Positions 1,255 through 45,214 of a stretch of DNA of 64,000 bases are shown one piece after another. This DNA comes from Macrostomum lignano (lineage: Eukaryota): positions 124,001 to 188,000 of the forward strand of contig NIVC01001010.1 in NCBI GenBank assembly GCA_002269645.1. Direction: 5' to 3'. Positions within the stretch are counted from its first letter, which is position 1, and each line of letters opens with the position of its first letter. A model generated the notes under the pieces. That model was not told the origin of the DNA. It did not search any database and saw only the letters and a program-made list of their open reading frames with translations. The translations under genes and the position numbers were made by a program.

Positions 1255-2004
1255 CACATGCAATATACCGGTAATCACCCGTAATAACAGCAAGCAAGAC
1301 AAAATCTATAAGAACCGCTCTTTAAGTGAACTGAGCTAGGAAGTTGTTGCAAAGATGCTAAATTCTCTCACCCCCTTGCTGACTGGCTGAATGCCAAGCG
1401 GGGTGCCCAACTGGCCCTGTGCCCAGCGTAGTTCACGTGACTAACAACTAAGGCTGTTATAAATGCACAACTTCTGTTTATCAGACCAGATTCACACATA
1501 GGCACTCACAGATGTGTAAGCCTAAGGCATAAGTTGCAGATACTGTCTGGCACTTAGAATTACAAATATAAGTCTTCAGTTAGTATCCGGTTTTATATTG
1601 GCCAGGAATCTGGAATAGATCTAGCCTACTATATCAATTTATCTATTCCAGCCAATCTTCTGAAGATGGAACCGCTTGCGCATTGAATTCTCATCGGTGA
1701 GGGCTATTAGCAACACATCTCCGCAGCACTGACAGCGTGTGCGCGTTTCATCTGTTTTCGAATCTTTACGTATTGGATTGTCCCAGCGTCATCATTCCTG
1801 TTTTGTTGAATTATCCTTTCTTCTTATACTATTATTATAAGTTTCGATGTTTTTACTGCTTATCCAAGTTTAGTTTCAAAAAAATAATTTCAATTTTCTC
1901 GCTTATTTAATTTTAATTAGCTAGCTAATTCTGCTTATTCGGATTCCTTATGATCTCTCTAGTCCACATCATTTGCTGTTTCCACTGAGCACAGAACTGA
2001 AGTT

Positions 2005-2810
2005 AGGAGTTGGAGTTGGGGAGTTGGAGTTGGGGAATTGGAGTTGGGGAATTGGAGTTGGGGAGCTGGAGTTGGGGAATTGGAGTTGGGGAATTGGAGT
2101 TGGGGAATTGGAGTTGGGGAATTGGAGTTGGGGAATTGGAGTTGGGGAATTGGAGTTGGGGAATTGGAGTTGGGGAATCGGAGTTGGGGAATTGGAGTTG
2201 GGGAATTGGAGTTGGGGAATTGGAGTTGGGGAATTGGAGTTGGGGAATCGGAGTTGGGGAATTGGAGTTGGGGAATCGGAGTTGGGGAATTGGAGTTGGG
2301 GAATCGGAGTTGGGGAGCTGGAGTTGGGGAATCGGAGTTGGGGAATTGAGTTGGGGAATCGGAGTTGGGGAGCTGGAGTTGGGGAGCTGGAGTTGGGGAA
2401 TCGGAGTTGGGGAATTGGAGTTGGGGAATCGGAGTTGGGGAGCTGGAGTTGGGGAGTTGGAGTTGGGGAGCTGGAGTTGGGGAATTGGAGTTGGGGAGTT
2501 GGAGTTGGGGAATCGGAATTGGGGAGCTGGAGTTGGGGAATCGGAATTGGGGAGCTGGAGTTGGGGAGTTGGAGTTGGGGAATCGGAGTTGGGGAGCTGG
2601 AGTTGGGGAATCGGAGTTGGGGAATCGGAGTTGGGGAGCTGGAGTTGGGGAGTTGGAGTTGGGGAATCGGAGTTGGGGAGCTGGAGTTGGGGAGCTGGAG
2701 TTGGGGAATCGGATTTGGGGAGCTGGAGTTGGGGAATCGGAGTTGGGGAGCTGGAGTTGGGGAATTGGAGTTGGGGAACTGGAGTTGGGGAATTGGAGTT
2801 GGGGATTGGA
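2005..2810. repeat. ~14-15-bp G-rich minisatellite (GGAGTTGGGG[G]AATT/AGCT/AATC)n
   Basis: Seen directly; explains the spurious ORFs at 1959-2921. Confidence 0.95.
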
Positions 2811-3733: not shown

Positions 3734-6700
3734 TCACCTGGCAGAGTTGGTCGAACGCTTGAAAAGTGTCGGCAGTCGAAGACTCGGACCTCCTCCGCCC
3801 TGCTTGCCTCTGTCGGCACTCTCTCCAGCTGCTTCTGCGTCAGACTCCAACAGCGGCTGCCGCTGTTGTTTGATTGGCGCCTCAGCTGGCGGCATGCGAT
3901 AGTTGTGATGCCGGCGGTGTCTGACTTGGCGGCGATGGTGCCTGCCGTGCTCGCAGCTGGCACCGTCTCTGCCGATTCGCTGCAGCTCGTCTGTCTGCGC
4001 TGGCTGCTTAGTTTCGTCTAGCTGTGGTATATACGAGTAGTTGATTTGTTTATTTATGTTTATATATAACTTTTTACCTACTGACAGTAGTAAGATTCAG
4101 ACTTCATCCTTTTTGAAAAGTTGGCACAAAATAATAAAAGCCAAAAAGGAAAATTTGATCACTATATCGGTACTTAATAGCATTAAACAAATGAAATGAA
4201 ACAAAGCGCTTTTTAAAACGGTACATATCCTATGCTCAAATATTCCCAATTCATGTCAAACTGTATCAAAGCGCTACGAAAACCATCTGTGTCAGATGCT
4301 GTAAGTGTCCATCTGTGTCAGATGCTGTAAGTGTGTCCGTCTGTGTCAGATGCTGTAAGTGTGTCCGTCTGTGTCAGATGCTGTAAGTGTCTATCTGCGT
4401 CAGATGCTGTAAGTGTCTATCTGTGTCAGATGCTGTAAGTGTCCATCTGTGTCAGATGCTGTAAGTGTCTATCTGTGTCAGATGCTGTAAGTGTGTCCGT
4501 CTGTGTCAGATGCTGTAAGTGTGTCCGTCTGTGTCAGATGCTGTAAGTGTCTATCTGTGTCAGATGCTGTAAGTGTCCATCTGTTTCAGATGCTGTAAGT
4601 GTCCATCTGTTTCAGATGCTGTAAGTGTCTATCTGTGTCAGATGCTGTAAGCGTCCATCTGTTTCAGATGCTGTAAGTGTCTATCTGTGTCAGATGCTGC
4701 AAATTCCTAGTGAAACAGTAAAGCGACCAAATGATTAAAAATAGTTGAAGAGTAAAAGAGGGCCAAACGGGATCGAAAAGGAAAATTGGCAAGCTGTGGC
4801 GGCGGGGGGTTCGCAAGGATCGGGTTGGGCGCGGGGGATTTCGGGGGGGGGGGGCAAAGACCTATTTTTTGCCTCCGGCCCTCCCGTCAGCCCCGCTAAA
4901 GCTTCCTCCTGCGCAATATTTGGCTTTTAGAGAGGGGAGAAGGGGCCAAATCAAGTGGGGAAGGCGCGGGCGAAGACCGGACTGGAATTATCCCATAGGT
5001 CCTGCATGCTAAATATGTACGAGCGTATATTGGGGGAGAAAAATCCCCACGAGAATTGGAGCTCAGCTCATTATGCACCAGCAAGCTCGCTTCATTTGTG
5101 CCTGGCTTTGATAGAGCTAGATGGAAACGGGCCGCCTGCTGAAGCCGAATTAACTTTGCTGAGGCTGTGCGTGAGCTGCGGATTGCGGCTTGGATTTCCC
5201 TTGCGCTGCGGTGCAGTCCTGCCGCCTGTCTGCTTCTGTGCCGCCTGTCTGCTTTTGTGCCGCCTGTCTGCTTCTGTGCCGCCTGTCTGCTTTTGTGCCG
5301 CCTGTCTGCTTTTGTGCCGCCTGTCTGCTTCTGTGCCGCCTGTCTGCGATTCTATCTGCCTGCGATTCTGTCTGTCTGCAATTCTGTCTGTCTGCGATTC
5401 TGTCTGTCTGCAATTCTGTCTGTCTGCAATTCTGTCTGTCTGCAATTCTGTCTGTCTGCAATTCTGTCTGTCTGCAATTCTGTCTGTCTGCAATTCTGTC
5501 TCTCTGCAATTCTGTCTGTCTGCAATTCTGTCTGTCTGCAATTCTGTCTCTCTGCAATTCTGTCTGTCTGCAATTCTGTCTCTCTGCAATTCTGTCTGTC
5601 TGCAATTCTGTCTCTCTGCAATTCTGTCTCTCTGCAATTCTGTCTGTCTGCAATTCTGTCTCTCTGCATTCTGTCTGTCTGCAATTCTGTCTCTCTGCAA
5701 TTCTGTCTGTCTGCAATTCTGTCTCTCTGCAATTCTGTCTGTCTGCAATTCTGTCTCTCTGCAATTCTGTCTGTCTGCAATTCTGTCTCTCTGCAATTCT
5801 GTCTCTCTTGGCTTCCTCAGAGATTCCTCATTAGCTGAATTGAGACAAACCGTGGCGCCATTGTGGCAACCAAGTCGAATTTATCAACCTGTTTTACTCC
5901 TTACACGCCTTAGCAACAATTGCTAATAATTTTAATTCTCATCAACATATTTTTATACTTAATTTTAATAAGTTTAGGCGACTAATAAGTTTGCTCTGAC
6001 CATTTTTGACAATAGATTGATTGTAATGATGGCAATCGGAACCACTTGAGGCAAGAGCTGGATTGATTAAAGAAAGCGAGTGAGATAATCTATAGGCTGG
6101 AACAATAGTTAAGAATGGCCTATATTATACACGTATAGCTAAGATATGTAATTATAGGGCATTAGCATACACCATGTAATTCCATGACACTGTTCAAACA
6201 CGACTAAGTGTTGCGCAATAACTCCTAATTATTAATAGGGTGCAGTGTTTTCTTTTCATTGTCTTTTTAACTGTATCTTTTCTGCACGAACTTTTAGCAC
6301 CCCCTGAATTTTCCGCAAAATGCACACACAAGCAGAAATACCGAGCCCTCATATTAAATTTTTCACCCTGAAAGGGCTAAAGCCGGCAGCAATTGAGGAG
6401 AAGATAAAGTCTGTACTCCACAACTTGTCCCTCTCTGCGTAATATCGAGCGACTTTACAACGAATTCAAGCGTAGCAGGGTGAGCCATAAAAGTTGAGGC
6501 AGTAGCGCGCACTGTGGGCATCTCAGCTGGGTCAGTGGATGGCATCCTGCGCAAGATCTTGGGCTGTTTCTTCTGAGACTGTCAGGGGATCCTGCTCGCC
6601 GAGTACCTGTCTGTTAGGCACACTGTCACAGGTGTCTGGTCCGCCGAACAGCTGGGCCGGTTTCGTCAGGCAGTGGTCCAGAAGAAGCGGGGGAAGCTGA

Positions 6701-9700
6701 GTGCTGGCCCCCTTGCTGCTTCACGACAATGCCTCAGCTCACACTGCCCAGGTTGCGGTGAATGCTGCCACCACTGCGGGGTTCGAAATCCTCCCACATC
6801 CGGCCTATTCACCAGACCTGGCACCCTCCGATTTTCATCTATTCCGTCAGCTCAAGCGGCCACTCCATGGGCACCGCTTCGAGTCCAAAGAAGAGGTCAT
6901 CACCCTCGCTAACCAGTGGCTACTTCAGAAAAGACTTACTATGAAGTTTTAAAAAAATTACCGAAATTTTACTGCCTATCCTTCCCACTCTACAGCATAG
7001 AAAAAAAACAGTTTGCGTAGGCCTAGACAAAAACTAGCTTTCATGCGCAAATAGTTCCACTTGTGTCAGTAGAGAGATTGGCATGCCAGGAACGAATGCT
7101 TTATGAAAACGAATGTTTAATTAAAGCGGTTACAGAATTTTCTACATAATAAAAGCTACCCAGACTTGCCTAACTCCAACTCTGGTTTCTCTTCATTCCA
7201 CGATTAAATCTTTCGCCTTTTACTAAAGATTTCCGTGGAGGGATACTCTTAGGAGAATTCTCTAGTTTTTGCAGCCCTTTCCTAGAAAGGCTTATTGGAA
7301 GTTGAATAGTTTAGACTAGCCTAGCTTAGCTCTTGAAAGTACTTTAGTTAGCCTTCCATTCCACTGTACATTTGTTTTTATCTCTACCCCACCCCTAGTC
7401 TTATCTTGCAGTCGCCCCACCCCTCTCAGCGAGCGCACTTTGTGTGCCTCCTGACTCATTAGTTAGTTGTAGTTTAGGTTTAGTTTGAGTGTACCCAAAT
7501 AATCACGCCATATGGCTGCAAATCGCGCCAGCGCTAAAAAGATGGACTGCCGGCCCTCTCTCGAGCACCGGTATCGTCCGAACGAAGCCTACGGTCGCCA
7601 GCTTCTTGGACTGACGCCGACAGCTGAGCCATCGACTGCGCAGGCCTGATGCGAGCTCGACGCAGTCTGGAAGGCCGCCACTCGATCAGCCCACCGGCCG
7701 GCGAGCTCTTGCGCAACGCAGAGGAGATCCTGCGAGAGAATGAGCAGCTGCCGGAGGCTGCAGGCGCAGAGGCAGAGCAGCGCATGTCTCTCGACTGCGA
7801 CGAGCCAGGCCAGAAAAGCGCCCTGCCATCCAACGAGGCCGCAGCAACCACCGAGCCACCAACTGCCGAGTCCAGCGAGCTCGGTGCGGCAGCGGCAGCG
7901 CCGACGTCTGAGGAGCGCCAGCAATCGGCTGCAGACCAGGCCTCGACGCTGCCAAAGCCCCCTGCCGAGCAACTGGACGCTGACATCAGTCAAATCATCT
8001 TCCCTGATGAGCCTGACTTGACTGACTGTCAGCAGACGATCTACGCCAGCGACAGCACCATCATCTATGCGCCCAAGTTCCTGAGCGAGGTCGCGGACCA
8101 AGTCTACGAGCGCCTGATCACCGACCTGCTGCCTCTGGCCTTTCAGCATCGTCCGAGTGAGCAGCGCCGCGTCTACTGGATCGGCCCGTCGTACACCTAC
8201 AGCGGGGTTGAGCTGAAGGAAAATCTAGACTGGCATCAGGTAATTGAAGACATTCGTGACTTCATTTACCATGATACCCAGTTCGATGTCCCGAAGTTCA
8301 ACTCCGTGTTGGTGAACTTCTACACCGAGCCGGGAGACCGGATTCCCTGGCACTCGGACGATGAGGATGAGCTCGGCGACAGGCCGACGATCGCGACCGT
8401 GTCCTTCGGCGCTGAGCGGCTGTTCATGCTGCGCCGTCGGGACGGCAACGTGACGCACCGCTTTCCAACGCTGCCAGGCTCGCTGATTCTGATGGCAGGA
8501 AACTGCCAGAAACGCCTGCAGCACCAGGTGCCCGCCGCCCACTCTCAGAATGGCGTCCGCATCTCGCTAACATTCCGTGTCACCAAGCCGGAGCTGCGGC
8601 GCAAGCGGCTCTGCCGGATGACCCGACCTACAGCCAGCCGCTCAACGGCGGCCCATTCGGCGACGACCAAGGCGGTCGGGACGACGACCAAGGCGGCCAC
8701 GACGACGACCAGGGCGGCCGGGGCGACGACAGGCCCCAGGAGCGGCAGGCGACGGCGACGCGAGACCGCGAAGGCGATCGGGGTCGGCGCGGCCGTGGCG
8801 GCCACCAGCGAGGCAGGCGAGGAGGTCGCGGCGCGGCGTCCGGTGCGGCGGCGGCTTCGGCGGCTTCCTGGCCGGCCGGTGCGGCGGCGGCTTCGGCGAC
8901 AAGCGCGCAGGCGGCTGCGGCAGCGCGGCCCTACGCGCAGGTTGCGGCGCGCCCTGCGCCGCCCAGAAGGCCCCAGGCTGCCATCCCGCCGATCGTTTTT
9001 GAGGTGCACCGGGACGCGGCCAACAAGCTGATGCAGTTCGTTGCCTGGCTGCAGACCAACTTTGCCGGCGAAGCTAGAGCCGTCAACACTGCGCCGATGG
9101 CGAATCAGCCGGCCTATCTCGTGTTCCCAGCGTCGGAGCGGGACTACAACGTCTTCCTGGGCGGCGCGCTGCGCGAGGAGAAGCTGCTCGAGCATCCCGT
9201 AAAGCGCCGTCCAGCCCGAGCCCGACCGCTGGACAACAGAACAGGGCCCGACAGAGTGCAGCAGCAGCCGGTACGCACCTTCGTCGCTACTGAGGTGCCC
9301 CTCGCATTCTCGGAGGCTGACTTCGCGACCCTGTTGCGCGGCACGCTCAAGCTGGACATTGTCAGCGTCCACAGAATCCGAGCCAGAGCGACTGGGAAGG
9401 CAACCCAGTTCGTGCGCATCTTCACAAAGTCGGCGATGACCTACGAGAAGTGCCTCCGCGATGGCATCTGCACCGACTTCTTGAAGTTCAACTGCGAGGA
9501 CAGCCGCACAGACGAGCCGGTCCGCGCTCTGCAATGCCAGCGCTGCCAGGAGTTCGGCCACCGCGCTGCTCAGTGTCGGGGGCAGCAGCGCTGCCGGATT
9601 TGCGGCGGCCAGCATTCCTGGAAGGAGTGCCAGCACGAGGGCCCAGCGGTCTGCGCCAACTGCGGCGGCTCGCACCGAACCACCAGTCGAGCCTGCACCG

Positions 9701-12700
9701 TCGCCAAGGCGGAGCACGACAAGGCGACCAGAGCGGCTGCTGAGGCCAAAGCCGCGGCGCGAGCTGCGGAAGCTGCGGCCGCTGCTGCCCCAGTGTCAAG
9801 TGAGACCGACGACGCCGCCGCCGACGACGACTCCGACAGCGGCTGGCTGATCCGCCGAGGCAGGCGCACGGTGCCGGTACCCGCCGCGATCCGGCCGCTT
9901 GTCATCGTGACCGATGATGCCAGGAGCGCTCCGGCGGCAGAGACCGAGTCTGATGTCAATGCGACTGCTCCGTCAGCTGATGCCGGCCAGGCGGTGCAGC
10001 TGCAGCTTAGTGACTTTATGTCGGTGGTGAGCATGCTGTTGCCCCTGATCACCCGCTCTCTGACTCAAGTGGTTGTGCAGGCCCTGTCCCGACCGCCTGG
10101 GGAGGTCCTCACTGTGGAATCAACCAGTAAAATGGTTGAGGACATTGTGCGGGCTGCACTCCAGGAAGTGCCGGGCATGGCTGGCATGACCACTGAGTCC
10201 TAGTCTCAGGCAGCTAAACTCAAGACTTGAATTGAAACTTCAGTGCGTTAACTGTAGACTCAAACAATCAAACCACAGCCCTGAAGATTATGCATTTAAA
10301 CTGCAGGGGATTCAACCCGAAAATCAGAGAGCTGACACAGTGGGTCGTCAGTCAGGAGCTAGACATTGCCCTCTTTTCTGAGACCATTCTCAAAAGTTGT
10401 CACACTGTCCAGATTCCCGGGTACTCCATCATTCGGTATGATACCCCGCAAGTCAAACGCGGGCTTCTCCTTGCCCACTCTCCTCGCGTCAAACTCACAA
10501 ATGTGCGCTTGCAGTATGACAATGTCAACCATGAAGCCATCTCTTGCACCGTGAGCTTGTCTGACAACTCTGGTCCTGACTTCAATCTCGCTCTGGTGTA
10601 CAGGTCTCCAGCACCGTACCATCTGAACCTGAACCTACTAAAAATCTTCTCTCTCGTAGGCGCAGTGTGCTCATGGGTGACCTCAATGCCAGACACCGCT
10701 TCCTCGGGGTGACAGCAGCAACAACATGGCTGGCTACCAGCTGCACGACTGGCTGTCTGAGGGCCCCACCTCGCCCACCATTCTCAATCAAGCCGGTCAG
10801 TTCACCAGACTGGCCACCAAAAACGGGCTGATTTCTAGGAATGTCTTGGACCTCGCCCTGGCCACTGAGGACTTTCTCCCATTTGTGCAGGACTTTGAGG
10901 TGGGTCCTGACCTGGGCAGTGACCACTTACCTATAATCCTCACGCTCAATATTCAGTCGAAGAAATGGGCTGGTCCCCCCAGACCCAAAAACTTCTCAAA
11001 AACAAACTGGGACGAGTTCAGACTCAAAATCAGTGAAGCTTTGAGCTCAGATCAGAATATTAAATTATCAAATGCTGACCAAATCAATGCCGAAGTGGAT
11101 CACATCACAAAGGCCATTCACACCGTGATTGACTCCACAGTACCAGACTGTGGTGCCAAAAACGCCCTACCCAAGTACATCCTCGACCTGATCAAAGAGC
11201 GCAGACGACTCAGACGCCTCTTCTTCAGCACACGGGATCAAAATTTCAAAACCCAAGCAAACCAGCTCGCAAATCGCATAAAGAGAGAAATTAACTCCTT
11301 CCAGAATGGAAAGCTCACCAAAGTCTGTGAGAGTATTGTTGAAAACAGCAAGAACAAGAAAGTGAAGAATTTCTGGCATGACACTAAAAAGCTGATGGGC
11401 AAATTTAAGCCAACCTCGATCCCCAGCCTCACCCTGGGTCAAACAACTGCGCACACAGATCTGGAGAAGGCTAACCTTCTAGCCGAGACTCTGGACTCAA
11501 AGATGCGCCCAGTCCCTTCCACATGCGAACAGCTCAAACGTGAGGTGGCCGATGTGGCACAGCTCACCTCATTCTACCCCGTTCCTGAGGGAATCGAACC
11601 CATCGAGACCACCCACTTGATGCTGCATTCTCTGTGGCAGACACAGTGTGGGAACTGGAGCACCTCAGGCCTGATGGAGCACCCGGGCTGGACAAGATTC
11701 CCAACTGCGTCCTCAAGCTGGGCTTAGAGGGGGTGGCAATCACGAGACTCACTAACCTCTTCAACGCCTGCTACGGTCGAGGGATTTTCCCCAGCGCCTG
11801 GAAGAAAGCTGTGGTGACAATGATCCCCAAGCCGGACAAACCGCCCGAACACCCCAACTCCTACAGACCAATCAGCCTGACCTCATGTCTGGGCAAAGTG
11901 TTTGAGAAGCTTATAGCAAAAAGACTCACCAAGCACCTTGAGGATAATAAGACCCTAGGAGATGACCAATGCGCCTACCGCAAAATTCACTCCACGTATG
12001 ACAACCTGTGCCGTCTGGCACAAGATGTCATGGTAGCAAAGTGCAAAGCTAAAAAGTCCGCTGCAGTCTTCCTGGATGCAGAGGCAGCTTTTGACTCCAC
12101 CTGGCACGACAAGATCAGGCATAGCATGCTCACCGATGGTTTTCCACCTATGCTCATGCGAATCCTGTCTGACTACCTGCGAGACAGACAGATCCAGGTT
12201 CGAATCGAGGGGGCCCTAAGCGATCCCCACACCATCCAGGCTGGCGTCCCTCAGGGAGGCATTCTGAGCCCTCTCCTGTACCTCCTCTTCGTCAGCTCAA
12301 TGCCGACTCCCACCATCTCAAGCGTCAAACGCAGTCAATTCGCAGACGACATGGCCGTCTGGGCCTCAGCAGACACCTTTGCGGGGCTCCGAACATCCCT
12401 TCAAAGCTACCTCAGACGAGTCTTTGACTGGTGCGGTAAACAAGGCATTAGACTGAATGCCGGTAAAAGCAAAGCAATCGCTTTCAACTACAAACCCACT
12501 AGGCGCATGGACTTGCGACCCAAACTGTATCTGGGGGACACTGAGGTTCCGTACTGTCAGGAGGTGAAATTCCTGGGTGTCCTCCTTGACCAGAGCCTCT
12601 GCCTGAACAAACATGTGGACAACATGGCAGATACCAGCAGAGCCATTGTAATGTCACTGTGCAGAATTGCAAAAATGACAAAGCTGAGTAGCACCACCCT

Positions 12701-15700
12701 CAGAATGCTGTACAGGGCATACGGAGAAAGCGCTCTCACCTACGGAGCGCCAATCCTGAGCCAAATCTGTGCGACTAACCAAATCAAATTGCAGAAAATT
12801 CAAAACCTGGCTCTCCGTATCTGCTATGGTGTGCCATCCTACATCAGCATTGAATACCTGCACAAGCTGGCAGGTATGCCGATGCTCGCAGACAGGGTCA
12901 AGCAGCTGGGGGTGGCTTGGCTGCTCAAGATGAGGGCAGCCAAGCTCCACAGCTTCCACATTGAGCCGGAAGCCCCTCGGGCTCCGGGCCGAACCCCTGT
13001 CCTCAATGTCCTCTGGGATGCCATGAGGCGTCGGGAAAGAAACAGGGGATTCCCACCCCAGGGTTAGGCTGGCTACCAGCCTTCCAAACCGGAAGTGACC
13101 ACGCTCTGAAACGCAACTAATAAAACTAAACTTGCTGCCTGAGACAGAGATCGGTTGATCAGTCATTAGGACTGATTAGGTAATCTCTATGTCTCCTCGC
13201 GTTTCTTTTTACAATTTTCCCAACTGTGTTTTTTACCCAACTGCTCTACAAATATTACTAATTGCTTTTTTACACCTTTACTATATTCATTCTATTTTTA
13301 CAACTAAATTCAAATATGCGCTATTGCATTTTTAATCTCTATTTTTTACTTAAATGTCTTGCTTTTATTCTCAATAGGCCTTCAAATATCTAGCACGTAT
13401 TTTTTAGATGTCCTGTTTTTATTAGATCCCTTCTTTGTGTGGGATTTCCCTCCCCTCTTTTTTATCCCCAAATGCGTGCAAAATACTGCAAAATATTGAA
13501 AAATAGTTTTATATATGTATATTTTTAATTTCAATATTCGTATTAAATATTCAAATCGAAATCTTGTAAATATTTTTAATTCTTTCGATCAAATACAAAA
13601 TATAACTGCGGCAGAGTTCTTCGGAACTGACCCGCGCCGGTTTCGACGGCACCTCGTTTTAACAACAAAGATTTCCGTGGAGGGATACTCTTAGGAGAAT
13701 TCTCTAGTTTTTGCAGGCCTTTCCTAGAAAGGCTTATTGGAAGTTAAATAGTTTAGACTAGCCTAGTTTAGCTCTTAAGAGTACTTTAGTTAGCCTTCCA
13801 TTCCACTGTACATTTGTTTTTTTATCTCTACCCCACCCCTAGTCTTATCTTGCAGTCGCCCCACCCCTCTCAGCGAGCGCACTTTGTGTGCCTCCTGACT
13901 CATTAGTTAGTTGTAGTTTAGGTTTAGTGTGAGTGCACCCAAATAATCACGCCATATGGCTGCAAATCGCGCCAGCGCTAAAAAGATGGACTGCCGGCCC
14001 TCTCTCGAGCACCGGTATCGTCCGAACGAAGCCTACGGTCGCCAGCTTCTTGGACTGACGCCGACAGCTGAGCCATCGACTGCGCAGGCCTGATGCGAGC
14101 TCGACGCAGTCTGGAAGGCCGCCACTCGATCAGCCCACCGGCCGGCGAGCTCTTGCGCAACGCAGAGGAGATCCTGCGAGAGAATGAGCAGCTGCCGGAG
14201 GCTGCAGGCGCAGAGGCAGAGCAGCGCATGTCTCTCGACTGCGACGAGCCAGGCCAGACAAGCGCCCTGCCATCCAACGAGGCCGCAGCAACCACCGAGC
14301 CACCAACTGCCGAGACCAGCGAGCTCAGTGCGGCAGCGGCAGCGCCGACGTCTGAGGAGCGCCAGCAATCGGCTGCAGACCAGGCCTCGACGCTGCCAAA
14401 GCCCCCTGCCGAGCAACTGGACGCTGACATCAGTCAAATCATCTTCCCTGATGAGCCTGACTTGACTGACTGTCAGCAGACGATCTACGCCAGCGACAGC
14501 ACCATCATCTATGCGCCCAAGTTCCTGAGCGAGGTCGCGGACCAAGTCTACGAGCGCCTGATCACCGACCTGCTGCCTCTGGCCTTTCAGCATCGTCCGA
14601 GTGAGCAGTGCCGCGTCTACTGGATCGACTGCACACAGACTCCATCTGTGTGCAGTATTTGTCCACTTTTTCAAACTCCAAATGTATGCAAAGAAATTCC
14701 AAATATTGAAAAATAGTTTTATTTATTTAAACTTTTATTTCAATATTCTTTCAATATCTAAATCAAATGCACTGCGCCGACCAGAAGGCTTCAGGCTGCC
14801 ATCCCGCCGGTGGTTTTCAAAGTGTAACAGGTCGCGGCCAACAAGCTGGTGCCCTATATTGCCTGGCTGCTCGTACAGGCAAATTTTTTGCTGGTGAAGC
14901 CGCGCCGTCAACACTGCGCAGATGGCGAATCAGCCGGCCTACATCGTATTGCCGGCGTCGGGGCGAGACTAAAATGTCTTCCTGGGCGGCGCGCTGCGTG
15001 AGGAAAAGCTGCTTGAACATCCGTCCAGAGCCCGACCGCTGGATAACCCATACAGGGCCCGACAGAGTCCAGCAGCAGCCAGTCATCACATTTGTCGCAC
15101 CTGACGTGCCTTTTGAGATCTCAGAGGCGACCCTCTGCTCTGTAGGATGCCATAAGGCTTCGGGAAAGAAACAGGGGATTCCTAATCCAAGGTTAGGCTG
15201 GTCGACAGTCTCCCAGAGCCGAAGTGAGCACGCGCTGAAATGCATTAAAGACTATTTATGCTGCCTGAGCCAGAGAGATCGGATGATAGGACCCTTGTAT
15301 GATCTGTAATCTCCCTGTGCAAATTGACTTTATTCAAACTATTTGTATTTTTTGACAGCTTTTACAAATACCCCTGGATGCTTTTATACCAATGATATAC
15401 TCGTACTACCTATAAAATTGTATCTGAACATGCGCTATTGCGTTTGATTTCATTTTTTACTCAGTAGCCTCTTTTTGCCTTTAACAGGCTCTTAAAAATC
15501 CAGCATGCATTTTTTAGATTTCCTTATTTTTATCACCTGTAAATATTTAAATTCTTTCGATTAAATAAAACAATAATACAGATATGTACCCGTTTTTACG
15601 GCACCTCGTTTTAACAACAACGATTTCCGTGAAGAGGAACATTCAAATTCAATGAGTGTTCCCTGATTTGTGAAACCCCTTACAAGAAATTGTACTAATG

Positions 15701-18700
15701 AAGCAAAAACATTGCTTGTCAATTCCCTCTAAGGCGTGATCGCAAGCCCATAGGACGCACGCAACACCATTTTCAAGTGTTGAAGTGTGCGGCGGAGTTT
15801 TTCGGAACTGATCTGCGCTAAGTTTTTACGGCCCCTCGTTTTAACAAAGATTTCCGTGATGAGGTACTCTCAACGAGAATTACATGTACTCTGATTTGTG
15901 CAACCCTTACAAAGGGTACAATAGACTTTGAATAGTTTAGCTCTATCTCAAAGTACGAGTACATAGCTAGCCCCTCCATCCATTCCACTGTACATTTATT
16001 TCCCCACTCTTCTAGTTTTATTTTGTAGTCGCCCCACTTCTTACTGAGCGGATTTTGTGTGCCTCCTGACCCTTAGAGTTTAGTGTTTTAGTTCGAGTGT
16101 ACCAAAAAGAAATCACGCCATATGGCTGCGAAGCGGATCGCAGAAGCCGAGGTCCAGGCAGGCCTCGACGCCGTGACCGAGTGGTGCGCCTCCCGCAAGC
16201 TCGCCCTTAATCCTACCAAGAGCGAGGCTGCCTTTTTCTCCATAGACCCGGCGAAGGCAAAATGGTCCCCGCGTCTTAGCCTCGGCCAAGCCCCACTCAA
16301 GCGCAATCTCACGCCGCGGCTGCTCGGCCTTACTTACGATCGGCTCCTCACCTTCAACACGCACACGGAAGGAGTTTGCAGGAAGGTGCATTCACGCAAT
16401 CGAATGCTGGTCTGCCTCGCCGCGCGCGATTGGGAATGGCAGAAAGACGCCCTCAAGCGCACTTTTATCGCCATGCAACGGAGTATCATGCTGTACGCCG
16501 ACCCCGCCTGTCACCCTTGGCTAGACGGCACCACTTTTGAGAAGCTCCAACGTTCGCAAAACGCCGCTCTCCGAATCATCACCGGCCAGCACCGCTCAAC
16601 GCCGATTGAAGCGCTGCGCATCGAGGCCAGTTTTTGCTTTGCTCTTTCCGTACCACAAGCGACATGGCGACTGGTCAGGTCAACCACCGCTCGGCCAGAG
16701 GCGGCACGCTTCCAACCTGCTCGCCACTTTGCCACCAGAGCGATAGTTGCGCGAACCACTTGACACCCGCTCTGCCTTCTCCCGCCCCGCCATCGTCATC
16801 CCTCATTACCCCGCGCTTATCTGCATCTATTGCGACGGCTCCGCCACTGAGGGCACCACCAACGGCGGTTTCTCTGTGGTCATCTGCACGGGTGACCCCT
16901 CCCCCCCCCCCAAGTGGTGTAGCACATCTCTGCCACCGGGCGCGCTCTCACCAGCTCCTTCGATGAGAAGCTCGCCGCTCCCCGTTGCGCTCTCCATTGG
17001 CTCGCTTCTGGTGCCCACTCTCAGTCGATGCTCTGCGCGCTCCAGAGCCCTACCTGTCGTATTTGGCCTACTCTCCTTCTGCCGCAATGCCAGTCAACAT
17101 CCGACGCGATGACGCAGACAGCGTACACGTTACACAGAAGAAAACGGCAGCTCGAAGGGCTTGCATGTTAAACGCATTTACATCTGCGACCTTCTCGATG
17201 TATAAGAATTTGCCTCTGACGGGTCAACAATTCAAGAGCTCTGGGATCGTCATGGATTACATCAGACAGCACGTTCTAGGACAAGTTAACATCATCGTGG
17301 AGAGAAACCGATTTTAGAAACGTCAAAAAACAATGGAGGAAATTTCAGCTACAATTTCAATTTCAAGAGTAATGGGTTGACTAAAGAGTAGTTTGATGAC
17401 TTGGCTGGGCTAATTGTTGTTAGTGTTGTTTGCATGTACTTTATTCAGTGTTTTGGAGGTGGCGTTTTTACCCTGTTCAGTACGTGCGCCCTTCTACAAT
17501 ATTTCGCTGTACGTTCTTATGTACGCTTTTCATTCTGAACGCTCTTGTACAATACGATGGACGCATTCCCTCCAGCATGCTGTATGGACACCCGACAAGG
17601 GACCCCCCTGCTCATTTACGAAGCTTTAACCTTGAGTGGTACAGCACAATTGAGCAGATGGAGCAGACTGCATCTGAAACCCACAAGACAGTGATGCAGC
17701 AGTACAACAAGTCCAAGAAGAGTCTCGACCGAATCAGAATTGGCTCGACTGTGGTTCTACAAGACCCGACAACCAAGCTGGGGCAACGGAGGGGCGTGGT
17801 GGTGGAGGTAGGCAAACACCGCGACTACATATACCTGATCAAGCTAACTAGTGGCCGAATACTACGGAGAACTCGTATCTGCATCCGGCCAGCACTACCA
17901 TGGAATGCCGATGATCTGCACCAGGCGACTAGCAAGCTGGTGGATCGAGAATGTACCAAGACGGACAATGACGGAGACTTGAGGATCAAAGGCCACAGGA
18001 GAGACCTCGCGTTAGTGCCAGATCGACAAAAAATATCCCACCAGTTCGGTTTCAGTGCAGCCGACTGGGGCAGCCGAAAGTTCTGTTCGTCGAGTAAATA
18101 AGGAACAATGACTTTAAAGGGCAGATGGTATAGATGATGAGATACCGTATTTATATCTATGGCCCTGACCCAAAGCCTACGTGCTTGGCCCGCTATCAGA
18201 GCAGCCCAACATGCAATAGGTATAACACTGTACACAATTACCTTGGCCAGGTGTTTAGCAATGAGCCGCCAGCGCGGTAGCAGCAGGTGGCGCTGCAAGG
18301 CGAAGGCCAGAATGACCAGTGGGAAGGCGAGGGCTGCGTAGGCCAGCTGCAGAAACTGGGCCAGGCAGTTCAGCGTGAGCAGCATCAGCACGTGGGCCAG
18401 CTGCAGAGCCGTGAACGCCAGCAGCACAGCGCTCGGCACGTCCAAGTAGGGCTTCGGCTGGCGATTCTTCTTCAGTTTCAGCAGGTTGAACAGCCGGTCG
18501 GCCAGCTGCAGGTCGGCCAGGGCGGCCAGGCCCATGCAGAGGAACATGCCGTCCATGGCGGCCAGCGGGATGAGGCGCAGCAGCCGGGCCGCCAGCACCG
18601 AGGCCACCAGCAGGGCCCCCACGGCCAGGCCGCTGACCCGCTGCTCGGCCACGCCAAGGACGCGCCTCGGACAGCCGGGAATCGGGTTAGCCGGATCCGC

Positions 18701-21700
18701 CAGCGTCAGCACCCGGACGTGCGTGTGCGATCGGATGGTGGCCCCTGTCAGCAGCGGCCAGCCCAGCAGGCCGTGCAGCGGCGGCGCCAGCGACGCGATG
18801 AGAGCCAGGCTGAGGTGACGGCCAGCCGGCTTGGCCAGGCGCTGCTCCAGGCCGCTGTCGCACAGGCCGGTCTCGGTGAACAGCACCACGGCGGTGCAGC
18901 AGCCGATCAGCAGGGCGATGAGGTGGCCGAAGGCGCCAACGGTGGCCAGGTCGGCTGCGCTGGGCAGGCGTGGCGACAGGCCCGACAGCAGCTGGGTGAG
19001 ATTGCCGCTGAGCTGCGGGAGTGCCATGCCGGTGCCTTTCTTTAGGTTTGATCAGTTCGGCAAAACTGAGGGCGATCTCGGAAATTGGAATGGCGATTTA
19101 CGCGGGATTTCATTTGTGCCGGAATGAGTTAGCTGAGAAAGGGAAAATTCCCCTGCATGGTGGTTAGTCATCCATTCTCCCTTCTCTCCTTTCATCTCAC
19201 TCTTCTCCTTTCCTTTCCTCTCCTCTCCTCTGCTCTCCTCTCCTCTCCTCTCCTCTCCTCTCCTCTCCTCTCCTCTCTCCTCTCATCTACTCTCCTCTCC
19301 TCTCCTCTCCTCTCCTCTCCTCCTCTCCTCTCCTCTCTCCTCTCGTCTACTCTCCTCTCCTCTCTTCTCTCCTCTCCTCTCTCCTCTCCTTTCTTTCCTC
19401 TCTTCTCTTCTCCTCTCTCCTCTCCTCTTCTCTCTTCTCTCCTCTCCTCTCTTCTCTCCTCTCCTCTCTTCTCTTCTCCTCTCCTCTCCTCTCCTCTCCT
19501 TTCTTCTCTCTCCCCTCTCCTCTCCTCTTACCCATAATTTGGAAATCCCATGTGAGTGAAATAGTCCCAATTAACCTCTCAGCGCTAAAGCTAAATACCC
19601 CGCACAATGGAGCATCTCAATAAAACACCCCCATACCTGCAGCGTGGCCAGTTCGTGATGCCGCATTGCAGTATTCGACAGCAGGGTGACCGCTGCGATG
19701 GCCAGCGGCACGTTCAATCCGGCTATGAGGTCCCGGGTTCGACGCCCTAAATAATTGCCCCGTTTAAAGCGCATAATTCGCAGCGCCAGCAGCGCCGTGG
19801 CCAGCGTCAGGAAGGCGGCGGCGGCGGAGGCGGCGCAGGACTCGCCGGCCAGCTGGGCGAACATGCGCACAGTCGGGCGCAGCAGGAAGAAGATGGCAAC
19901 GAACAGGTTGAAGATCTCCTCGGTGGCGCGGGTGATTCTGCCTGCCAGGCCGGCTCCGTTCAGCAGCAGGATGGCCAGGCCGCACAGGCCCGTGTAGGCG
20001 CAGCAGACTGGGCGGAAGGCCCGCCAGGGCAGGCCTAGTGAGGCCGACAGCGAGCTGATGGCCTGGGTTTGGAGGAATTGGGAGGGTTGATTGACATTGC
20101 TGACTATAGAGTGACATTGATACCGATAGAGTGACATTGATACCGATAGTGACATTGATACCGATAGAGTGACATTGATACCGATAGAGTGACATTGATA
20201 CCGATAGAGTGACATTGATACCGATAGAGTGACATTGATACCGATAGAGTGACATTGATACCGATAGAGTGACATTGATACCGATAGAGTGACATTGATA
20301 CCGATAGAGTGACATTGATACCGATAGAGTGACATTGATACCGATAGAGTGACATTGATACCAATAGAGTGACATTGATACCGATAGAGTGACATTGATA
20401 CCGATAGAGTGACATTGATACCGATAGAGTGACATTGATACCGATAGAGTGACATTGATACCGATAGAGTGAAATTAATACCGATAGAGTGACATTGATA
20501 CCGATAGAGTGACATTGATACCAATAGAGTGACATTGATACCAATAGAGTGACATTGATACCGATAGAGTGACATTGATGTCGATAGAGTGACATTGATA
20601 CCGATAGAGTGACATTGATGTCGATAGAGTGACATTGATGTCGATAGAGTGACATTGATGTCGATAGAGTGACATCGATGTCGATAGAGTGACATTGATA
20701 CCAATAGAGTGACATTGATGTCGATAGAGTGACATTGATGTCGATAGAGTGACATCGATGTCGATAGAGTGACATTGATACCAATAGAGTGACATTGATG
20801 TCGATAGAGTGACATCGATGTCGATAGAGTGACATCGATGTCGATAGAGTGACATTGATACCAATAGAGTGACATCGATGTCGATAGAGTGACATTGATA
20901 CCAATAGAGTGACATTGATGTCGATAGAGTGACATTGATGAAAATAGAGTGACGCTGCAAGGAATATTGGACTGAAATTCTAAAGAAATACTGCTGGAGG
21001 CATCTGAATTAGAAAATTGTAAGACATGAGAACTACCTGCTCCATGATGAAGATCGGGCCAGTCACTCCCACCAGCATCATGGGCTGGCCGCCGGCGGCA
21101 GCGAAGGCCAGCTGTCCGAGGCCGCTGGCCACCAGAGTCCGGCCGACGGTCAGCTCGCCCGCAGTCTCGTTGTGCAGCATAGCGCCGAACGACACCGCCG
21201 GGGCCAGGCATGTGAAAAACACGAACAGCAGGCCGGTTGCTATTGGCAACGCGTGACGCCTGGCGTCAGCCAGGTCGCCCGGGTAGCGGCGCCGCAGGTT
21301 GCTCAAGTCGCTGAGCAGTCCAGACGCAGCCAGCCAGACCGGGCAGCGCCAATTACCCGGCGACGCCGTAGCTGCTGCCGCAACCGGCGTCGCCAGCCCG
21401 ACATCGGCCGACGAAAATCCGACATCGTCGACTCCATCGACATCGGCTACGCGATGCTCACTGCCGCTGTCGTCCTCAACCTCGGCGGCGGCGGCCTCCT
21501 CGAACCGGACGAGCTCCTCGATGGTGTCCATAGTCCAGGCGGCTGGGGAGGGCAGCACCACGGTGCCGTCCAGGCTGCTGTGCAGGGCGGCGACGAGGTC
21601 CCACCGGCAGCTGGCCGAGTAGAGGCGGGCGCGGAACACCGGGTCCATCGCCAGGCAGGCAAACACGCGGCCAAGCTCGAAGGCCAGCACCGGGTCCGCG

Positions 21701-41374: not shown

Positions 41375-42410
41375 GCTCTGATTTTGGCCATTGATGAACT
41401 CTAGTAGTACAGCTAAGTAGTATAGCTTACTCAAGCTAAAGAGGATTAATCAAGGACTACTCCAGTACAAGGATGAAAAACTTTTTGTTTCTTAGAAAAG
41501 TTTCGAAGGCCGAATTCGAGCGGAAAGTACGCTAACCGAGATACGAAGCAACTGAGTGAAAAAATAACCTATTATATTTAATAAATAATATTTCATTAGA
41601 TAAGTGAAAACAATGTATAGTATAGCTCGTAATTTTATTTTCTTAGTTTATTAGTATAGCCTTTTATTTTTTTCTAAGAAACCTTGTGATTCATCAAGAT
41701 AATTGCAACGACAATAGCATTGTAGACCCTAAATTTTACTCAAAATAGACTACTCTATCCTACTTTTAGTAGCTTAAGTAGCATAATTTAGGATGAATTG
41801 GAATTCGTCAAGAAAAATGGATATTATTGTACAATTATCGAGTGCAGGTGTTAGATATGCAATGCATCCTGCAGTGCATGATGAATTGTCATTTAAATTT
41901 AGACACCGCATCGATAACCTACTTACACGAAGAGCCATTACGAGTAGAGTATTAAGTGTTTTTTCTCTTTATCAACTAGCAAGCCTCACTGTTCTAAAAC
42001 GTACCGTTTCTCCTCAAATTGCTTTAGCAACTCGCAGCTACATTTAGCCAATGCTAATTACTGAAATATTTATTAACCCTAGCAGCAACTGTTGCACATG
42101 CGATATTCAATTTAGCTACATGATCTAGTGCATTAGGAGACCCAGCATTCGCACTCAGCACCATTCACTACATATATATTATTTTATCCTGCAGATAATT
42201 ATTGATACTATATAACAAGTTAGCTAGTTCGATCTACAATAATAAATAATTTAGAATATCTATCTCTTTGATGTAGTTTTTGCTATGTAGCACATCCTTA
42301 AAAACATGACTCATCGTATTCGTTTGAATTTTACACTGGATGTGTGAGGGCCTATGCTATATATACTGCTGTTAGTAGGGCTCATCAAATCGCGATCCTC
42401 TTGGTGCCTG

Positions 42411-44665: not shown

Positions 44666-45214
44666 GCATCTTGCCATTAAAAAAGAAATAGAAGCGATGC
44701 CAACCGTCTGCAAGAGCGGTAATGATTGACTGAGTAGAGTGGCTGCTCCGTGAAACTCCCAAAACCAAAACTGAAGTGTGCAGCTCCTGTACGCGACCTC
44801 AATTCCATAATTTATTGTACTAGCAAAAGTATTCAATTAAAAGCGCAAACAAAGTCAAGCATATCTCGAGCTAATTGTACTTTTTATTGATAAAACAAAC
44901 GCCAAAGTAAAATCATAGATCATTTGGATGAAAAATTGCAACATTGCAGAGAGGAATCTAGACTAATAAATCAATGTACGACTTCATCTATCAGAGTACA
45001 ATACGACAAATATCACCCCATGGCGAAGTTAAGACGCAACCCAACTAGCCTATTGATTTACAAGGAGATTTGGAGAAAAATATGATTCTAAATACAAGTA
45101 ATTATATGATTGACAAGCCGAACTCATTTTATTAATTTTTGATAAATCAGGAAACCTTCTATGTAACTTTTGTTGCTAGAATAGTGCTTAAAGGGGGCTC
45201 GGGGGTATGTAGTT

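What the first reader, a model, noticed from the sequence alone, without database searches (positions are those of the whole stretch)
8060..8585. AlkB (2OG-Fe(II) dioxygenase) domain at the N-terminus of a LINE ORF1 protein
Seen: all catalytic motifs are intact (HxD in WHSDDE, distal H in LQHQVP, RISLTFR, NSVLVNFY, plus YTYSG and ATVSFGAER of ALKBH2/3 style). The domain lies inside the element, between its 5' UTR and the RRM/CCHC gag-like region, and its start is repeated in copy 2, so it travels with the element. Established: AlkB enzymes remove m1A/m3C (some remove m6A) from ssDNA/RNA, and plant RNA viruses carry AlkB in their replicases. Usual ORF1 accessory domains are PHD, esterase, RRM and CCHC. 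Inference: the RNP may clear RT-blocking methyl lesions or host methyl marks from its own RNA. That would be especially relevant if the RNA begins as a U5 transcript.
Basis: partly seen in the sequence, partly recalled or inferred. Interest (0 to 1): 0.85.

Follow-up and report, generated by a model that had tools for sequence, protein, structure and literature searches.

The report
AlkB demethylase domain in LINE ORF1
A jumping gene (LINE retrotransposon) of the flatworm Macrostomum lignano has an intact ALKBH3-like nucleic-acid demethylase fused to its RNA-packaging protein, related elements keep the same fusion under selection, and it probably removes methyl lesions that would block copying of the element's RNA.

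Summary
Window 8030-8580 encodes a complete AlkB-type Fe(II)/2-oxoglutarate dioxygenase: Pfam PF13532 E=1e-21, human ALKBH3 87 bits, model pLDDT 88, TM 0.8 to ALKBH3. All iron and 2OG ligands are present.

It lies in a 6.4-kb APE+RT LINE of Macrostomum lignano, upstream of two RRM-like modules and three CCHC knuckles. The window copy is damaged: one frameshift between AlkB and the gag-like part, and three 1-bp deletions in ORF2. Paralogous copies read AlkB and the gag-like part in one frame, and one has an intact 926-aa ORF2.

All near-identical copies sit in tandem arrays at one locus. Better evidence comes from divergent relatives. Elements whose ORF2 is 56% and 39% identical have uninterrupted AlkB+RRM+CCHC ORF1s. 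Other M. lignano families share the architecture. dN of AlkB equals that of ORF2 (0.39; dN/dS about 0.3).

The likely function is removal of RT-blocking m1A/m3C from the element's own RNA or cDNA. This is inferred, not tested. The donor is unresolved.

No searchable paper describes AlkB in a LINE ORF1. Plant RNA viruses and orchid Ty3/Gypsy elements are the precedents.

Side finding: the element sits in a U5 snRNA gene and carries its own U5 3' half.

The parts
7177..7292 (+). Complete U5 snRNA sequence at the 5' junction. Positions 1-48 (7177-7224) come from the target gene and positions 49-117 (7225-7292) are carried by the element.
   Evidence: Rfam RF00020 scores 81 bits against a gathering score of 40. 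The unit boundary at 7224/7225 comes from the self-comparison and the junction alignment.
7225..13666 (+). LINE copy 1, one 6442-bp unit: U5 3' half, 5' UTR, ORF1, ORF2, 3' UTR.
   Evidence: Self-BLAST. It is 99% identical to tandem units in L001, L004 and L005.
7512..7648 (+). Upstream ATG segment. In paralogous copies a 13-bp insertion after 7639 puts this ATG (MAANRAS...) in frame with ORF1. In the window it forms a short upstream ORF whose stop overlaps the ORF1 ATG.
7649..8029 (+). ORF1 N-terminal low-complexity (Ala/Glu/Pro-rich) region.
   Evidence: Translation. No Pfam hit.
8030..8580 (+). AlkB (ALKBH2/3-type Fe(II)/2OG dioxygenase) domain. HxD at 8351-8359, distal His in LQHQVP 8516-8533, RxxxxxR in RISLTFR 8558-8578, 2OG-contacting N and Y in NSVLVNFY 8300-8323.
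8600..8610 (+). Site of the 1-base deficit that shifts the window copy, and copy LA, from the AlkB frame into the RRM/CCHC frame. Four of six full copies have the extra base and read through.
   Evidence: Proteins P0002, P0102, P0103, P0104.
8608..8988 (+). Low-complexity (Gly/Arg/Asp, then Ala-rich) linker. It is read in the frame of the RRM/CCHC part.
8989..9501 (+). Two RRM-like (beta-alpha-beta-beta-alpha-beta) modules of ORF1.
   Evidence: AlphaFold model with pLDDT >=90 in both modules. The Foldseek top hits are all tandem-RRM proteins.
9535..9696 (+). Three CCHC zinc knuckles (9535-9576, 9592-9630, 9652-9696). ORF1 ends at 10203.
   Evidence: zf-CCHC hits in P0103 and L006.
10290..13067 (+). 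ORF2: APE endonuclease (about 10290-10950) and reverse transcriptase (RVT_1, about 11823-12581). It is broken in the window by 1-bp deletions at 10639, 10705 and 11608. It is intact (926 aa) in paralogue LA.
13068..13666 (+). AT-rich 3' UTR ending ...CGTTTTAACAAC. It has no poly(A) and is joined directly to U5 position 49.
13667..14627 (+). Copy 2, the 5' part only: U5 3' half, 5' UTR and ORF1 up to the first third of the AlkB domain. 98.6% identical to copy 1.
14663..16135 (+). Deleted remnant of an older related element (69-78% identity). It has the same 3' UTR, U5 3' half, 5' UTR junction at about 15840, with a third U5 variant.

Best explanation
The region encodes a genuine, catalytically competent ALKBH2/3-type AlkB dioxygenase. 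It is an integral N-proximal domain of the ORF1 protein of an APE-type LINE of Macrostomum lignano. The ORF1 order is leader, AlkB, linker, two RRMs, three CCHC knuckles.

Shown: the fold, the catalytic residues and the fusion are conserved across a lineage of such LINEs. The domain evolves under purifying selection as strong as that on ORF2.

Inferred: ORF1p coats the element's own transcript. The tethered AlkB domain then oxidatively removes N1-methyladenine, N3-methylcytosine and similar lesions from the single-stranded RNA template, and possibly from the nascent cDNA or exposed target DNA. These lesions are hard stops for reverse transcriptases, so each RNP cleans its template before or during target-primed reverse transcription.

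The window copy itself is a damaged member (frameshifts in ORF1 and ORF2) of a tandem array inserted in a U5 snRNA gene.
For: Identity of the domain:
- Pfam E=1.2e-21.
- PDB phmmer finds ALKBH3 at 87 bits and ALKBH2 at 60 bits, and nothing else.
- Model pLDDT 87.8, TM 0.8 to ALKBH3 bound to ssDNA.
- N, Y, HxD, H and RxxxxxR are conserved.

Part of a LINE:
- Two RRM-like modules and three CCHC knuckles follow.
- APE and RT follow those.
- One frame joins AlkB to the gag-like part in P0002, P0102, P0103 and P0104.
- The paralogue LA has an intact 926-aa ORF2.

Conservation of the fusion:
- L006 has an uninterrupted ORF1 plus a 946-aa ORF2 that is 56% identical.
- L009 has an 843-aa ORF1 (P0225) plus a 948-aa ORF2 that is 39% identical, and its ORF1 is collinear with the window's.
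- L011 has a 962-aa ORF1 followed directly by APE.
- Further M. lignano families exist: P0229-P0231, P0374, P0234.

Selection, M. lignano versus L006:
- AlkB dN 0.39, dS 1.33.
- ORF2 dN 0.39.
- Linker plus gag-like part dN 0.59.
- All 13 TE-borne domains keep the catalytic residues.

From established knowledge: ALKBH3 prefers single-stranded DNA and RNA and removes m1A and m3C. These lesions block reverse transcriptases. Plant-virus AlkB domains repair viral RNA.
Against: No enzymatic or retrotransposition data exist, so substrate and target are inferred from family resemblance only.

The window copy and every other sequenced copy of this particular family carry at least one frame-breaking indel in ORF1 under the single-ORF model. 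Some of these may be long-read assembly errors.

The near-identical copies all lie at one locus, so recent transposition of this family is not shown.

Most LINEs manage without such a domain, so the benefit may be specific to the host or the niche.

ALKBH3 has also been reported to act on m6A in tRNA, so a regulatory-mark role is not excluded.
Confidence: 0.6

Rival explanations
1. The domain is an eraser of a regulatory RNA mark (m6A, or enzymatically installed m1A). It strips host-applied marks from the LINE transcript to escape epitranscriptomic silencing or decay, rather than repairing damage.
For: An orchid Ty3/Gypsy lineage carries an AlkB domain with demonstrated m6A demethylase activity and was interpreted this way (PMC9289625). 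Tethering to ORF1p would place the enzyme on the element's RNA. The catalytic residues are intact.
Against: The orchid enzyme is ALKBH5-like. The flatworm domain shows no detectable similarity to ALKBH5 or FTO even at E<=10, and it groups by sequence and structure with ALKBH3 and ALKBH2. The main substrates of those two enzymes are m1A and m3C.
Confidence: 0.2
2. The domain works on DNA rather than on the RNA template. It would repair alkylated single-stranded DNA exposed at the nicked target or in the first-strand cDNA, or otherwise condition the integration site.
For: ALKBH3 and ALKBH2 are DNA repair enzymes. The best structural matches are ALKBH3 bound to ssDNA and ALKBH2 bound to dsDNA. 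ORF1 proteins accompany the RNP to the target.
Against: Nothing distinguishes RNA from DNA substrates in the sequence. ORF1p is primarily an RNA-binding, packaging protein (two RRMs and CCHC knuckles), which places the domain on RNA for most of the cycle.
Confidence: 0.12
3. The AlkB sequence is a neutral passenger: a captured host exon, a chimeric locus amplified by tandem duplication, or a gene-prediction artefact, with no role in the element.
For: All 99%-identical copies are tandem units at one locus shared by several contigs. Each has frame-breaking indels. The gag-like part alone found no homologues in the indexed search.
Against: Divergent elements on independent contigs keep AlkB in the same uninterrupted ORF1 together with an intact ORF2. 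dN/dS is about 0.3 and dN equals that of ORF2. Catalytic residues are invariant in 13 TE-borne domains. The probable host AlkB gene (P0238, C2H2 zinc finger plus AlkB) is only 40% identical, so this is not a recent exon capture.
Confidence: 0.04

Closest known systems
Human ALKBH3 (and ALKBH2), the AlkB family of Fe(II)/2-oxoglutarate dioxygenases
   Same: It shares the double-stranded beta-helix fold (TM 0.8), the HxD...H iron triad, the RxxxxxR 2OG-binding motif and the N/Y contacts. Identity over the core is 30-40%.
   Different: It is fused inside a retrotransposon ORF1 protein, between a low-complexity leader and the RRM/CCHC modules. It is not orthologous to the probable host gene (P0238). 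Bacterial AlkBs of about 200 aa are marginally closer (44-45%) than animal ALKBH3 (40%). The domain tree does not resolve the donor.
AlkB domains in the replicase polyproteins of plant RNA viruses (flexi-, clostero- and betaflexivirus-type)
   Same: A selfish RNA-templated replicon encodes its own AlkB, presumably to keep its RNA free of methyl lesions. The model also matches these viral domains structurally, at TM 0.6-0.7.
   Different: The replicon type differs (an RdRp virus versus a nuclear LINE). The fusion partner differs (methyltransferase/helicase replicase versus an RNA-packaging ORF1p). The viral domains are structurally less similar than ALKBH3.
Orchid (Phalaenopsis) Ty3/Gypsy LTR retrotransposons with an AlkB ORF (PMC9289625)
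   Same: A retrotransposon lineage that fixed an AlkB dioxygenase. Activity was shown in vitro there.
   Different: That case is an LTR element, not a LINE. The domain sits in a separate extra ORF. It is ALKBH5-like, an m6A eraser, whereas this one is ALKBH3-like. The host is a plant, not an animal.
Type-I LINE ORF1 proteins (RRM plus CCHC knuckles, as in the I, Jockey and R1 groups) and their known accessory domains (PHD, esterase)
   Same: Two RRM-like modules followed by three CCHC knuckles, upstream of an APE+RT ORF2.
   Different: There is an additional enzymatic AlkB domain. The ORF1 surveys found by full-text search (PMC4120745, PMC3905857, PMC13343379) do not contain the word AlkB. The RT clade of this element was not determined.
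Target-specific LINEs of small-RNA genes (Keno and Utopia in U2; a Tx1 family listed as targeting U5 in PMC4494074, fig. 3 legend)
   Same: The insertion is at one precise position of an snRNA gene (U5 loop I, between positions 48 and 49). Successive insertions occur at the same site.
   Different: The ORF2 relatives carry the Exo_endo_phos_2 type of APE, and the few named ones are Jockey/X-element-like, not L1/Tx1-like. The element carries its own U5 3' half and regenerates a full U5 at its 5' junction. Only one locus is documented.

Membership tests
AlkB family (ALKBH2/3 subgroup) of Fe(II)/2OG dioxygenases | Double-stranded beta-helix catalytic fold with the N-terminal nucleotide-recognition extension | tested here: met
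   The AlphaFold model has pLDDT 87.8. Foldseek to ALKBH3 gives TM 0.79-0.81 over about 205 columns, E=2e-17.
AlkB family (ALKBH2/3 subgroup) of Fe(II)/2OG dioxygenases | HxD...H iron-binding triad | tested here: met
   WHSDDE (8348-8365) and LQHQVP (8516-8533). H121, D123 and H178 are invariant in a 43-sequence alignment.
AlkB family (ALKBH2/3 subgroup) of Fe(II)/2OG dioxygenases | 2-oxoglutarate-binding RxxxxxR motif and the N/Y contacts | tested here: met
   RISLTFR (8558-8578) and NSVLVNFY (8300-8323). R190, R196 and Y111 are invariant and N109 is nearly invariant.
AlkB family (ALKBH2/3 subgroup) of Fe(II)/2OG dioxygenases | Oxidative demethylation of m1A/m3C in nucleic acid | not testable with these tools
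   This needs an enzyme assay or complementation of an E. coli alkB deletion.
ALKBH5/FTO-type m6A erasers | Sequence or structural affinity to ALKBH5 or FTO | tested here: not met
   No ALKBH5 or FTO chain is found by phmmer at E<=10. Neither appears among the top 50 Foldseek PDB matches.
APE-type non-LTR retrotransposon (LINE) | ORF2 with an apurinic-like endonuclease followed by a reverse transcriptase | tested here: met
   Exo_endo_phos, Exo_endo_phos_2 and RVT_1 are found in the intact paralogue (926 aa). The fragments in the window are broken by three 1-bp deletions.
APE-type non-LTR retrotransposon (LINE) | ORF1 nucleic-acid chaperone of type I (RRM plus CCHC) | tested here: met
   Two RRM-like modules and three CCHC knuckles.
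APE-type non-LTR retrotransposon (LINE) | Evidence of transposition: copies at independent sites, 5' truncations, target-site duplications or a defined 3' tail | tested here: inconclusive
   All copies of this family share one flank. Successive junctions at the same U5 position, with three different U5 3' halves, suggest repeated insertion. No TSD or poly(A) was seen. Divergent relatives occur on separate contigs.
AlkB-ORF1 fusion as a heritable trait of a LINE lineage | The same domain order in one uninterrupted ORF1 in divergent elements, under purifying selection | tested here: met
   L006, L009 (P0225), L011 (P0228), P0226, P0227 and P0374. AlkB dN 0.39 against dS 1.33.
snRNA-gene-specific LINEs (U5-targeting) | Many independent insertions at the same nucleotide of different U5 gene copies | tested here: inconclusive
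   Only one locus, present on four contigs, could be examined. The M. lignano genome cannot be searched by DNA with these tools. Relatives L006-L011 show no U5.

The most novel reading that the evidence does not exclude
A whole lineage of animal LINEs has permanently fused an ALKBH3-type demethylase to its RNA-packaging protein, so that each ribonucleoprotein proofreads its own template for RT-blocking methyl bases (or strips a host m1A/m3C-type restriction mark) before target-primed reverse transcription. This would be the first template-repair enzyme described in non-LTR retrotransposons. In the window family it is combined with a second trick. The element inserts into U5 snRNA genes and carries its own U5 3' half. 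Each insertion therefore rebuilds a complete U5 gene in front of itself, which could serve both as its promoter and leader and as the landing site for the next copy.
Probability: 0.4. Interest if true: 0.8.

Novelty: new variant of a known kind. Interest (0 to 1): 0.68.

Why it matters
LINE ORF1 proteins are regarded as RNA chaperones with a short list of accessory domains (PHD, esterase). An enzymatic nucleic-acid demethylase in ORF1 adds a new activity to the LINE toolkit.

It also gives a natural experiment on whether base methylation of retrotransposon RNA, as damage or as a host-applied mark, limits reverse transcription in vivo.

It extends the AlkB-in-selfish-replicons theme from plant RNA viruses and one plant LTR lineage to animal non-LTR elements. 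That spread suggests convergent pressure on RNA-templated replicons.

Practically, M. lignano is transgenic-tractable, so wild-type and HxD-mutant elements can be compared. ORF1-tethered AlkB could also be of interest for improving templated-insertion tools based on LINE or R2 machinery.

Tried and rejected
1. The copies in the window and in L001, L004 and L005 are about 99% identical and are tandem units of one locus, so there is no signal. I used the divergent relative L006 instead.

2. Indexed homologue search with the RRM/CCHC part. It returned only P0002. The exhaustive HMMER search with P0103 was needed to find the family.

3. Donor inference. A neighbour-joining tree with 500 bootstraps on 151 core columns leaves the position of the window domain unresolved. 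Monophyly with the other TE-borne domains has support 0.18. Bacterial, host and human sequences are all 40-45% identical.

4. Two-ORF reading (a separate AlkB ORF followed by a gag ORF, as in the window and in LA). I rejected it as the ancestral state, for two reasons. Four of six full copies and all divergent relatives read through. The 8643 C/A difference is a stop only in the AlkB frame and is silent in the gag frame.

5. TSD explanation for the duplicated U5 3' half. Rejected because the element-borne and target-borne halves differ strongly in sequence.

6. Mnemiopsis AlkB+esterase ORF as a proven LINE ORF1. Its esterase part shows no significant pairwise similarity to the neighbouring CR1-like ORF1, and the GDSL Pfam hit on P0101 is below the cutoff. 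I kept it only as a lead.

7. My recollection that Dada DNA transposons carry part of their target RNA gene. I did not find it in the paper, so I dropped it.

8. RT clade assignment. No reference RT set is available and the named hits are too few.

9. A Biopython bootstrap run timed out and was replaced by a numpy implementation.
Full report
**Where the window comes from.** The AlkB ORF is 99% identical to hypothetical proteins of the flatworm Macrostomum lignano (BOX15_Mlig027759g7/g8, assembly GCA_002269645.1). The rest of the window holds ordinary animal genes:
- an SLC4-type bicarbonate transporter
- a BTB ORF and an RCC1-repeat ORF
- a rhodanese-domain ORF
- a mariner-like fragment
- satellite arrays

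**The observation.**
- Pfam 2OG-FeII_Oxy_2 matches with E=1.2e-21.
- Against all PDB sequences, the only hits with E below 0.1 are human ALKBH3 (87 bits, E=1e-23) and ALKBH2 (60 bits). E. coli AlkB, ALKBH1, ALKBH5-8 and FTO are not found even at E<=10.
- An AlphaFold model built on a 43-sequence alignment has pLDDT 87.8. It superposes on ALKBH3-ssDNA complexes with TM about 0.8, on ALKBH2 with 0.77-0.79 and on E. coli AlkB with about 0.65.
- The iron triad (H, D, H), the two 2OG arginines and the N/Y contacts are invariant or nearly so in that alignment.

The folded domain spans about 8030-8580.

**Anatomy of the element.** Self-comparison defines a 6442-bp unit at 7225-13666. It is followed by a second, truncated unit at 13667-14627 (98.6% identical) and by a deleted remnant of an older relative at 14663-16135 (69-78%). 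Downstream of AlkB and a low-complexity linker lie:
- two RRM-like modules. The model has pLDDT >=90 within each module, and all top Foldseek hits are tandem-RRM proteins.
- three CCHC knuckles
- an APE endonuclease plus reverse transcriptase ORF2

This is a type-I LINE ORF1 with an extra enzymatic domain. The nearest ORF2 relatives outside the family are APE+RT elements of the Exo_endo_phos_2 type, and the few that carry names are Jockey/X-element-like. I could not assign the RT clade.

**State of the window copy.** Relative to six full copies, the window copy:
- lacks one base near 8607, which separates the AlkB frame from the RRM/CCHC frame
- lacks 13 bp at 7639, which disconnects an upstream ATG at 7512
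- has three 1-bp deletions in ORF2

Annotated proteins from paralogous copies read leader, AlkB, linker and RRM/CCHC in one frame (P0002, P0102, P0103, P0104). Copy LA has an intact 926-aa ORF2. Every copy has at least one frame-breaking indel in ORF1, but at different sites. The majority state is therefore one ORF1 running from 7512 to 10203. Some indels may be long-read assembly errors.

All 99%-identical copies (window, L001, L004, L005) are tandem units behind the same upstream flank (window 4283-7224). That is one ancestral locus, present on several contigs of this polyploid genome.

The decisive evidence comes from divergent relatives:
- L006 (a Logan contig, organism unknown) has an uninterrupted ORF1 of at least 684 aa with AlkB, linker, RRM and three CCHC knuckles. 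It also has an intact 946-aa ORF2 that is 56% identical to the M. lignano ORF2.
- An exhaustive HMMER search with P0103 found full-length, Met-initiated AlkB+RRM+CCHC proteins of 757-962 aa (P0225-P0228). It also found several further M. lignano proteins of the same architecture (P0229-P0231, P0374, P0234).
- P0225 lies on a 9-kb contig (L009), followed by a 948-aa APE+RT ORF2 that is 39% identical to the M. lignano ORF2. The two ORF1s are collinear over 560 residues.
- P0228 is followed immediately by an APE ORF.

Between M. lignano and L006, Nei-Gojobori estimates give:

| Region | dN | dS |
|---|---|---|
| AlkB half | 0.39 | 1.33 |
| ORF2 | 0.39 | saturated |
| linker plus gag-like part | 0.59 | 1.53 |

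All 13 TE-borne AlkB domains examined keep the catalytic residues.

**Origin.** The window domain is 40% identical in the core to a probable host AlkB gene (P0238, C2H2 zinc finger plus AlkB, three paralogues) and 40% to human ALKBH3. It is 44-45% identical to the best AlkBs from bacterial or unnamed metagenomic sources. A bootstrapped NJ tree does not place it. It is not a recent capture of the host gene, and the donor is unresolved. The shared domain order and the closer ORF2 similarity among AlkB-bearing elements favour a single old acquisition. The AlkB tree alone does not prove that.

**Mechanism.**
- Shown: an ALKBH3-like, catalytically complete domain is tethered to an RNA-packaging protein and is kept by selection.
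- From established knowledge: ALKBH3 acts on single-stranded DNA and RNA, removing m1A and m3C. These bases stop reverse transcriptases. Plant-virus AlkB domains repair viral RNA.
- Inferred: ORF1p brings the enzyme onto the element's own transcript, and perhaps onto the cDNA, where it clears such lesions before or during target-primed reverse transcription.

An m6A-eraser role, as shown for the ALKBH5-like ORF of orchid Ty3/Gypsy elements (PMC9289625), is less likely given the family assignment. It is not excluded.

**The U5 context.** Rfam finds a full U5 snRNA at 7177-7292, and the unit boundary lies inside its loop I, between positions 48 and 49. Every unit begins with the same U5 3' half. 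At the 3' end of the array in L005, the last unit abuts a clearly different U5 3' half, which is the original target. The older remnant has the same junction with a third variant.

The element therefore carries its own U5 3' half and rebuilds a complete U5 (81-84 bits) at its 5' junction. This would let new copies insert upstream of old ones, which fits the order seen in the window: young, then truncated, then old. It also makes U5-promoter read-through transcription plausible.

A Tx1 family targeting U5 is listed in PMC4494074, so U5 targeting as such is not new. The relatives L006-L011 show no U5. The known U5 modifications are not AlkB substrates, so this context does not bear on the AlkB function.

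**Novelty.** Full-text searches found AlkB in plant viruses and in orchid Gypsy elements. They found no paper describing AlkB in a LINE ORF1, and the ORF1 surveys retrieved do not contain the word. UniProt merely labels the M. lignano proteins 'Fe2OG dioxygenase domain-containing'. I rate this a new variant of a known kind, of solid interest to transposon and RNA-modification specialists.

**Limits.**
- There is no functional test.
- The organisms of the Logan contigs are unknown.
- The M. lignano genome could not be searched by DNA.

Noticed in passing
window 7177-7292 and 13667-13735; L005 12114-12190; L001 2483-2598: The LINE sits in loop I of a U5 snRNA gene, between positions 48 and 49, and each unit starts with its own U5 3' half. 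A full U5 (Rfam 81-84 bits) is therefore rebuilt at the 5' junction. The array's 3' end abuts a different U5 3' half, which is the original target. This could explain the head-to-tail arrays as repeated insertion into the regenerated U5.
   Followed up: partly
window 14663-16135: Mosaic remnant of an older related element (69-78% identity). It has the same 3' UTR, U5 3' half, 5' UTR junction (about 15840) but a third U5 variant. This suggests at least two subfamilies used this site.
   Followed up: partly
L002 9910-12132 (Mnemiopsis leidyi CM108489.1), with ORFs at 13103-15464; also protein P0101: A 740-aa ctenophore ORF has two tandem AlkB domains with intact catalytic residues, followed by an SGNH/GDSL-like region. 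It lies just upstream of PHD/APE-like and RT ORFs. P0101 (ENA) is AlkB plus a weak GDSL hit. This may be an independent AlkB acquisition by an esterase-type (CR1/L2-like) LINE ORF1, but the esterase homology is not significant.
   Followed up: partly
L012 2120-5158 and 5542-7398 (Logan SRR19430222): A 1012-aa ORF with a central AlkB domain (P0375) is followed by an ORF with the HTH_animal and DUF8422 domains and no RRM/CCHC similarity. This may be AlkB in yet another kind of mobile element.
   Followed up: no
protein P0238 and paralogues P0376, P0377 (M. lignano contigs of 140-551 kb): Probable host AlkB gene with an N-terminal C2H2 zinc finger and a C-terminal AlkB domain. It is only 40% identical to the LINE domain in the core.
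   Followed up: no
window 7512-7650: In the window copies a short upstream ORF (MAANRAS...) ends in TGATG, overlapping the ORF1 start. In all paralogous copies a 13-bp insertion after 7639 fuses it in frame to ORF1.
   Followed up: partly
window 1866-2600, 28852-30400, 35486-37200, 42259-44800; also 4955-5926: Large satellite arrays with periods of 14, 14, 34 and 50 bp. There is also a repeat block upstream of the U5 gene that gives spurious long ORFs in all frames.
   Followed up: no
window 6701-6952 and 16152-16616: A mariner/Tc1-like DDE_3 transposase fragment lies just upstream of the U5 gene. An unrelated RT fragment (28% identity to the element's RT) lies just after the old remnant.
   Followed up: no
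window 17825-21211 (-), 46450-48417 (-), 52584-53321 (-), 56878-57597 (-): Host-gene exons: an SLC4-type bicarbonate transporter, a BTB ORF, an RCC1-repeat ORF and a rhodanese-domain ORF.
   Followed up: no
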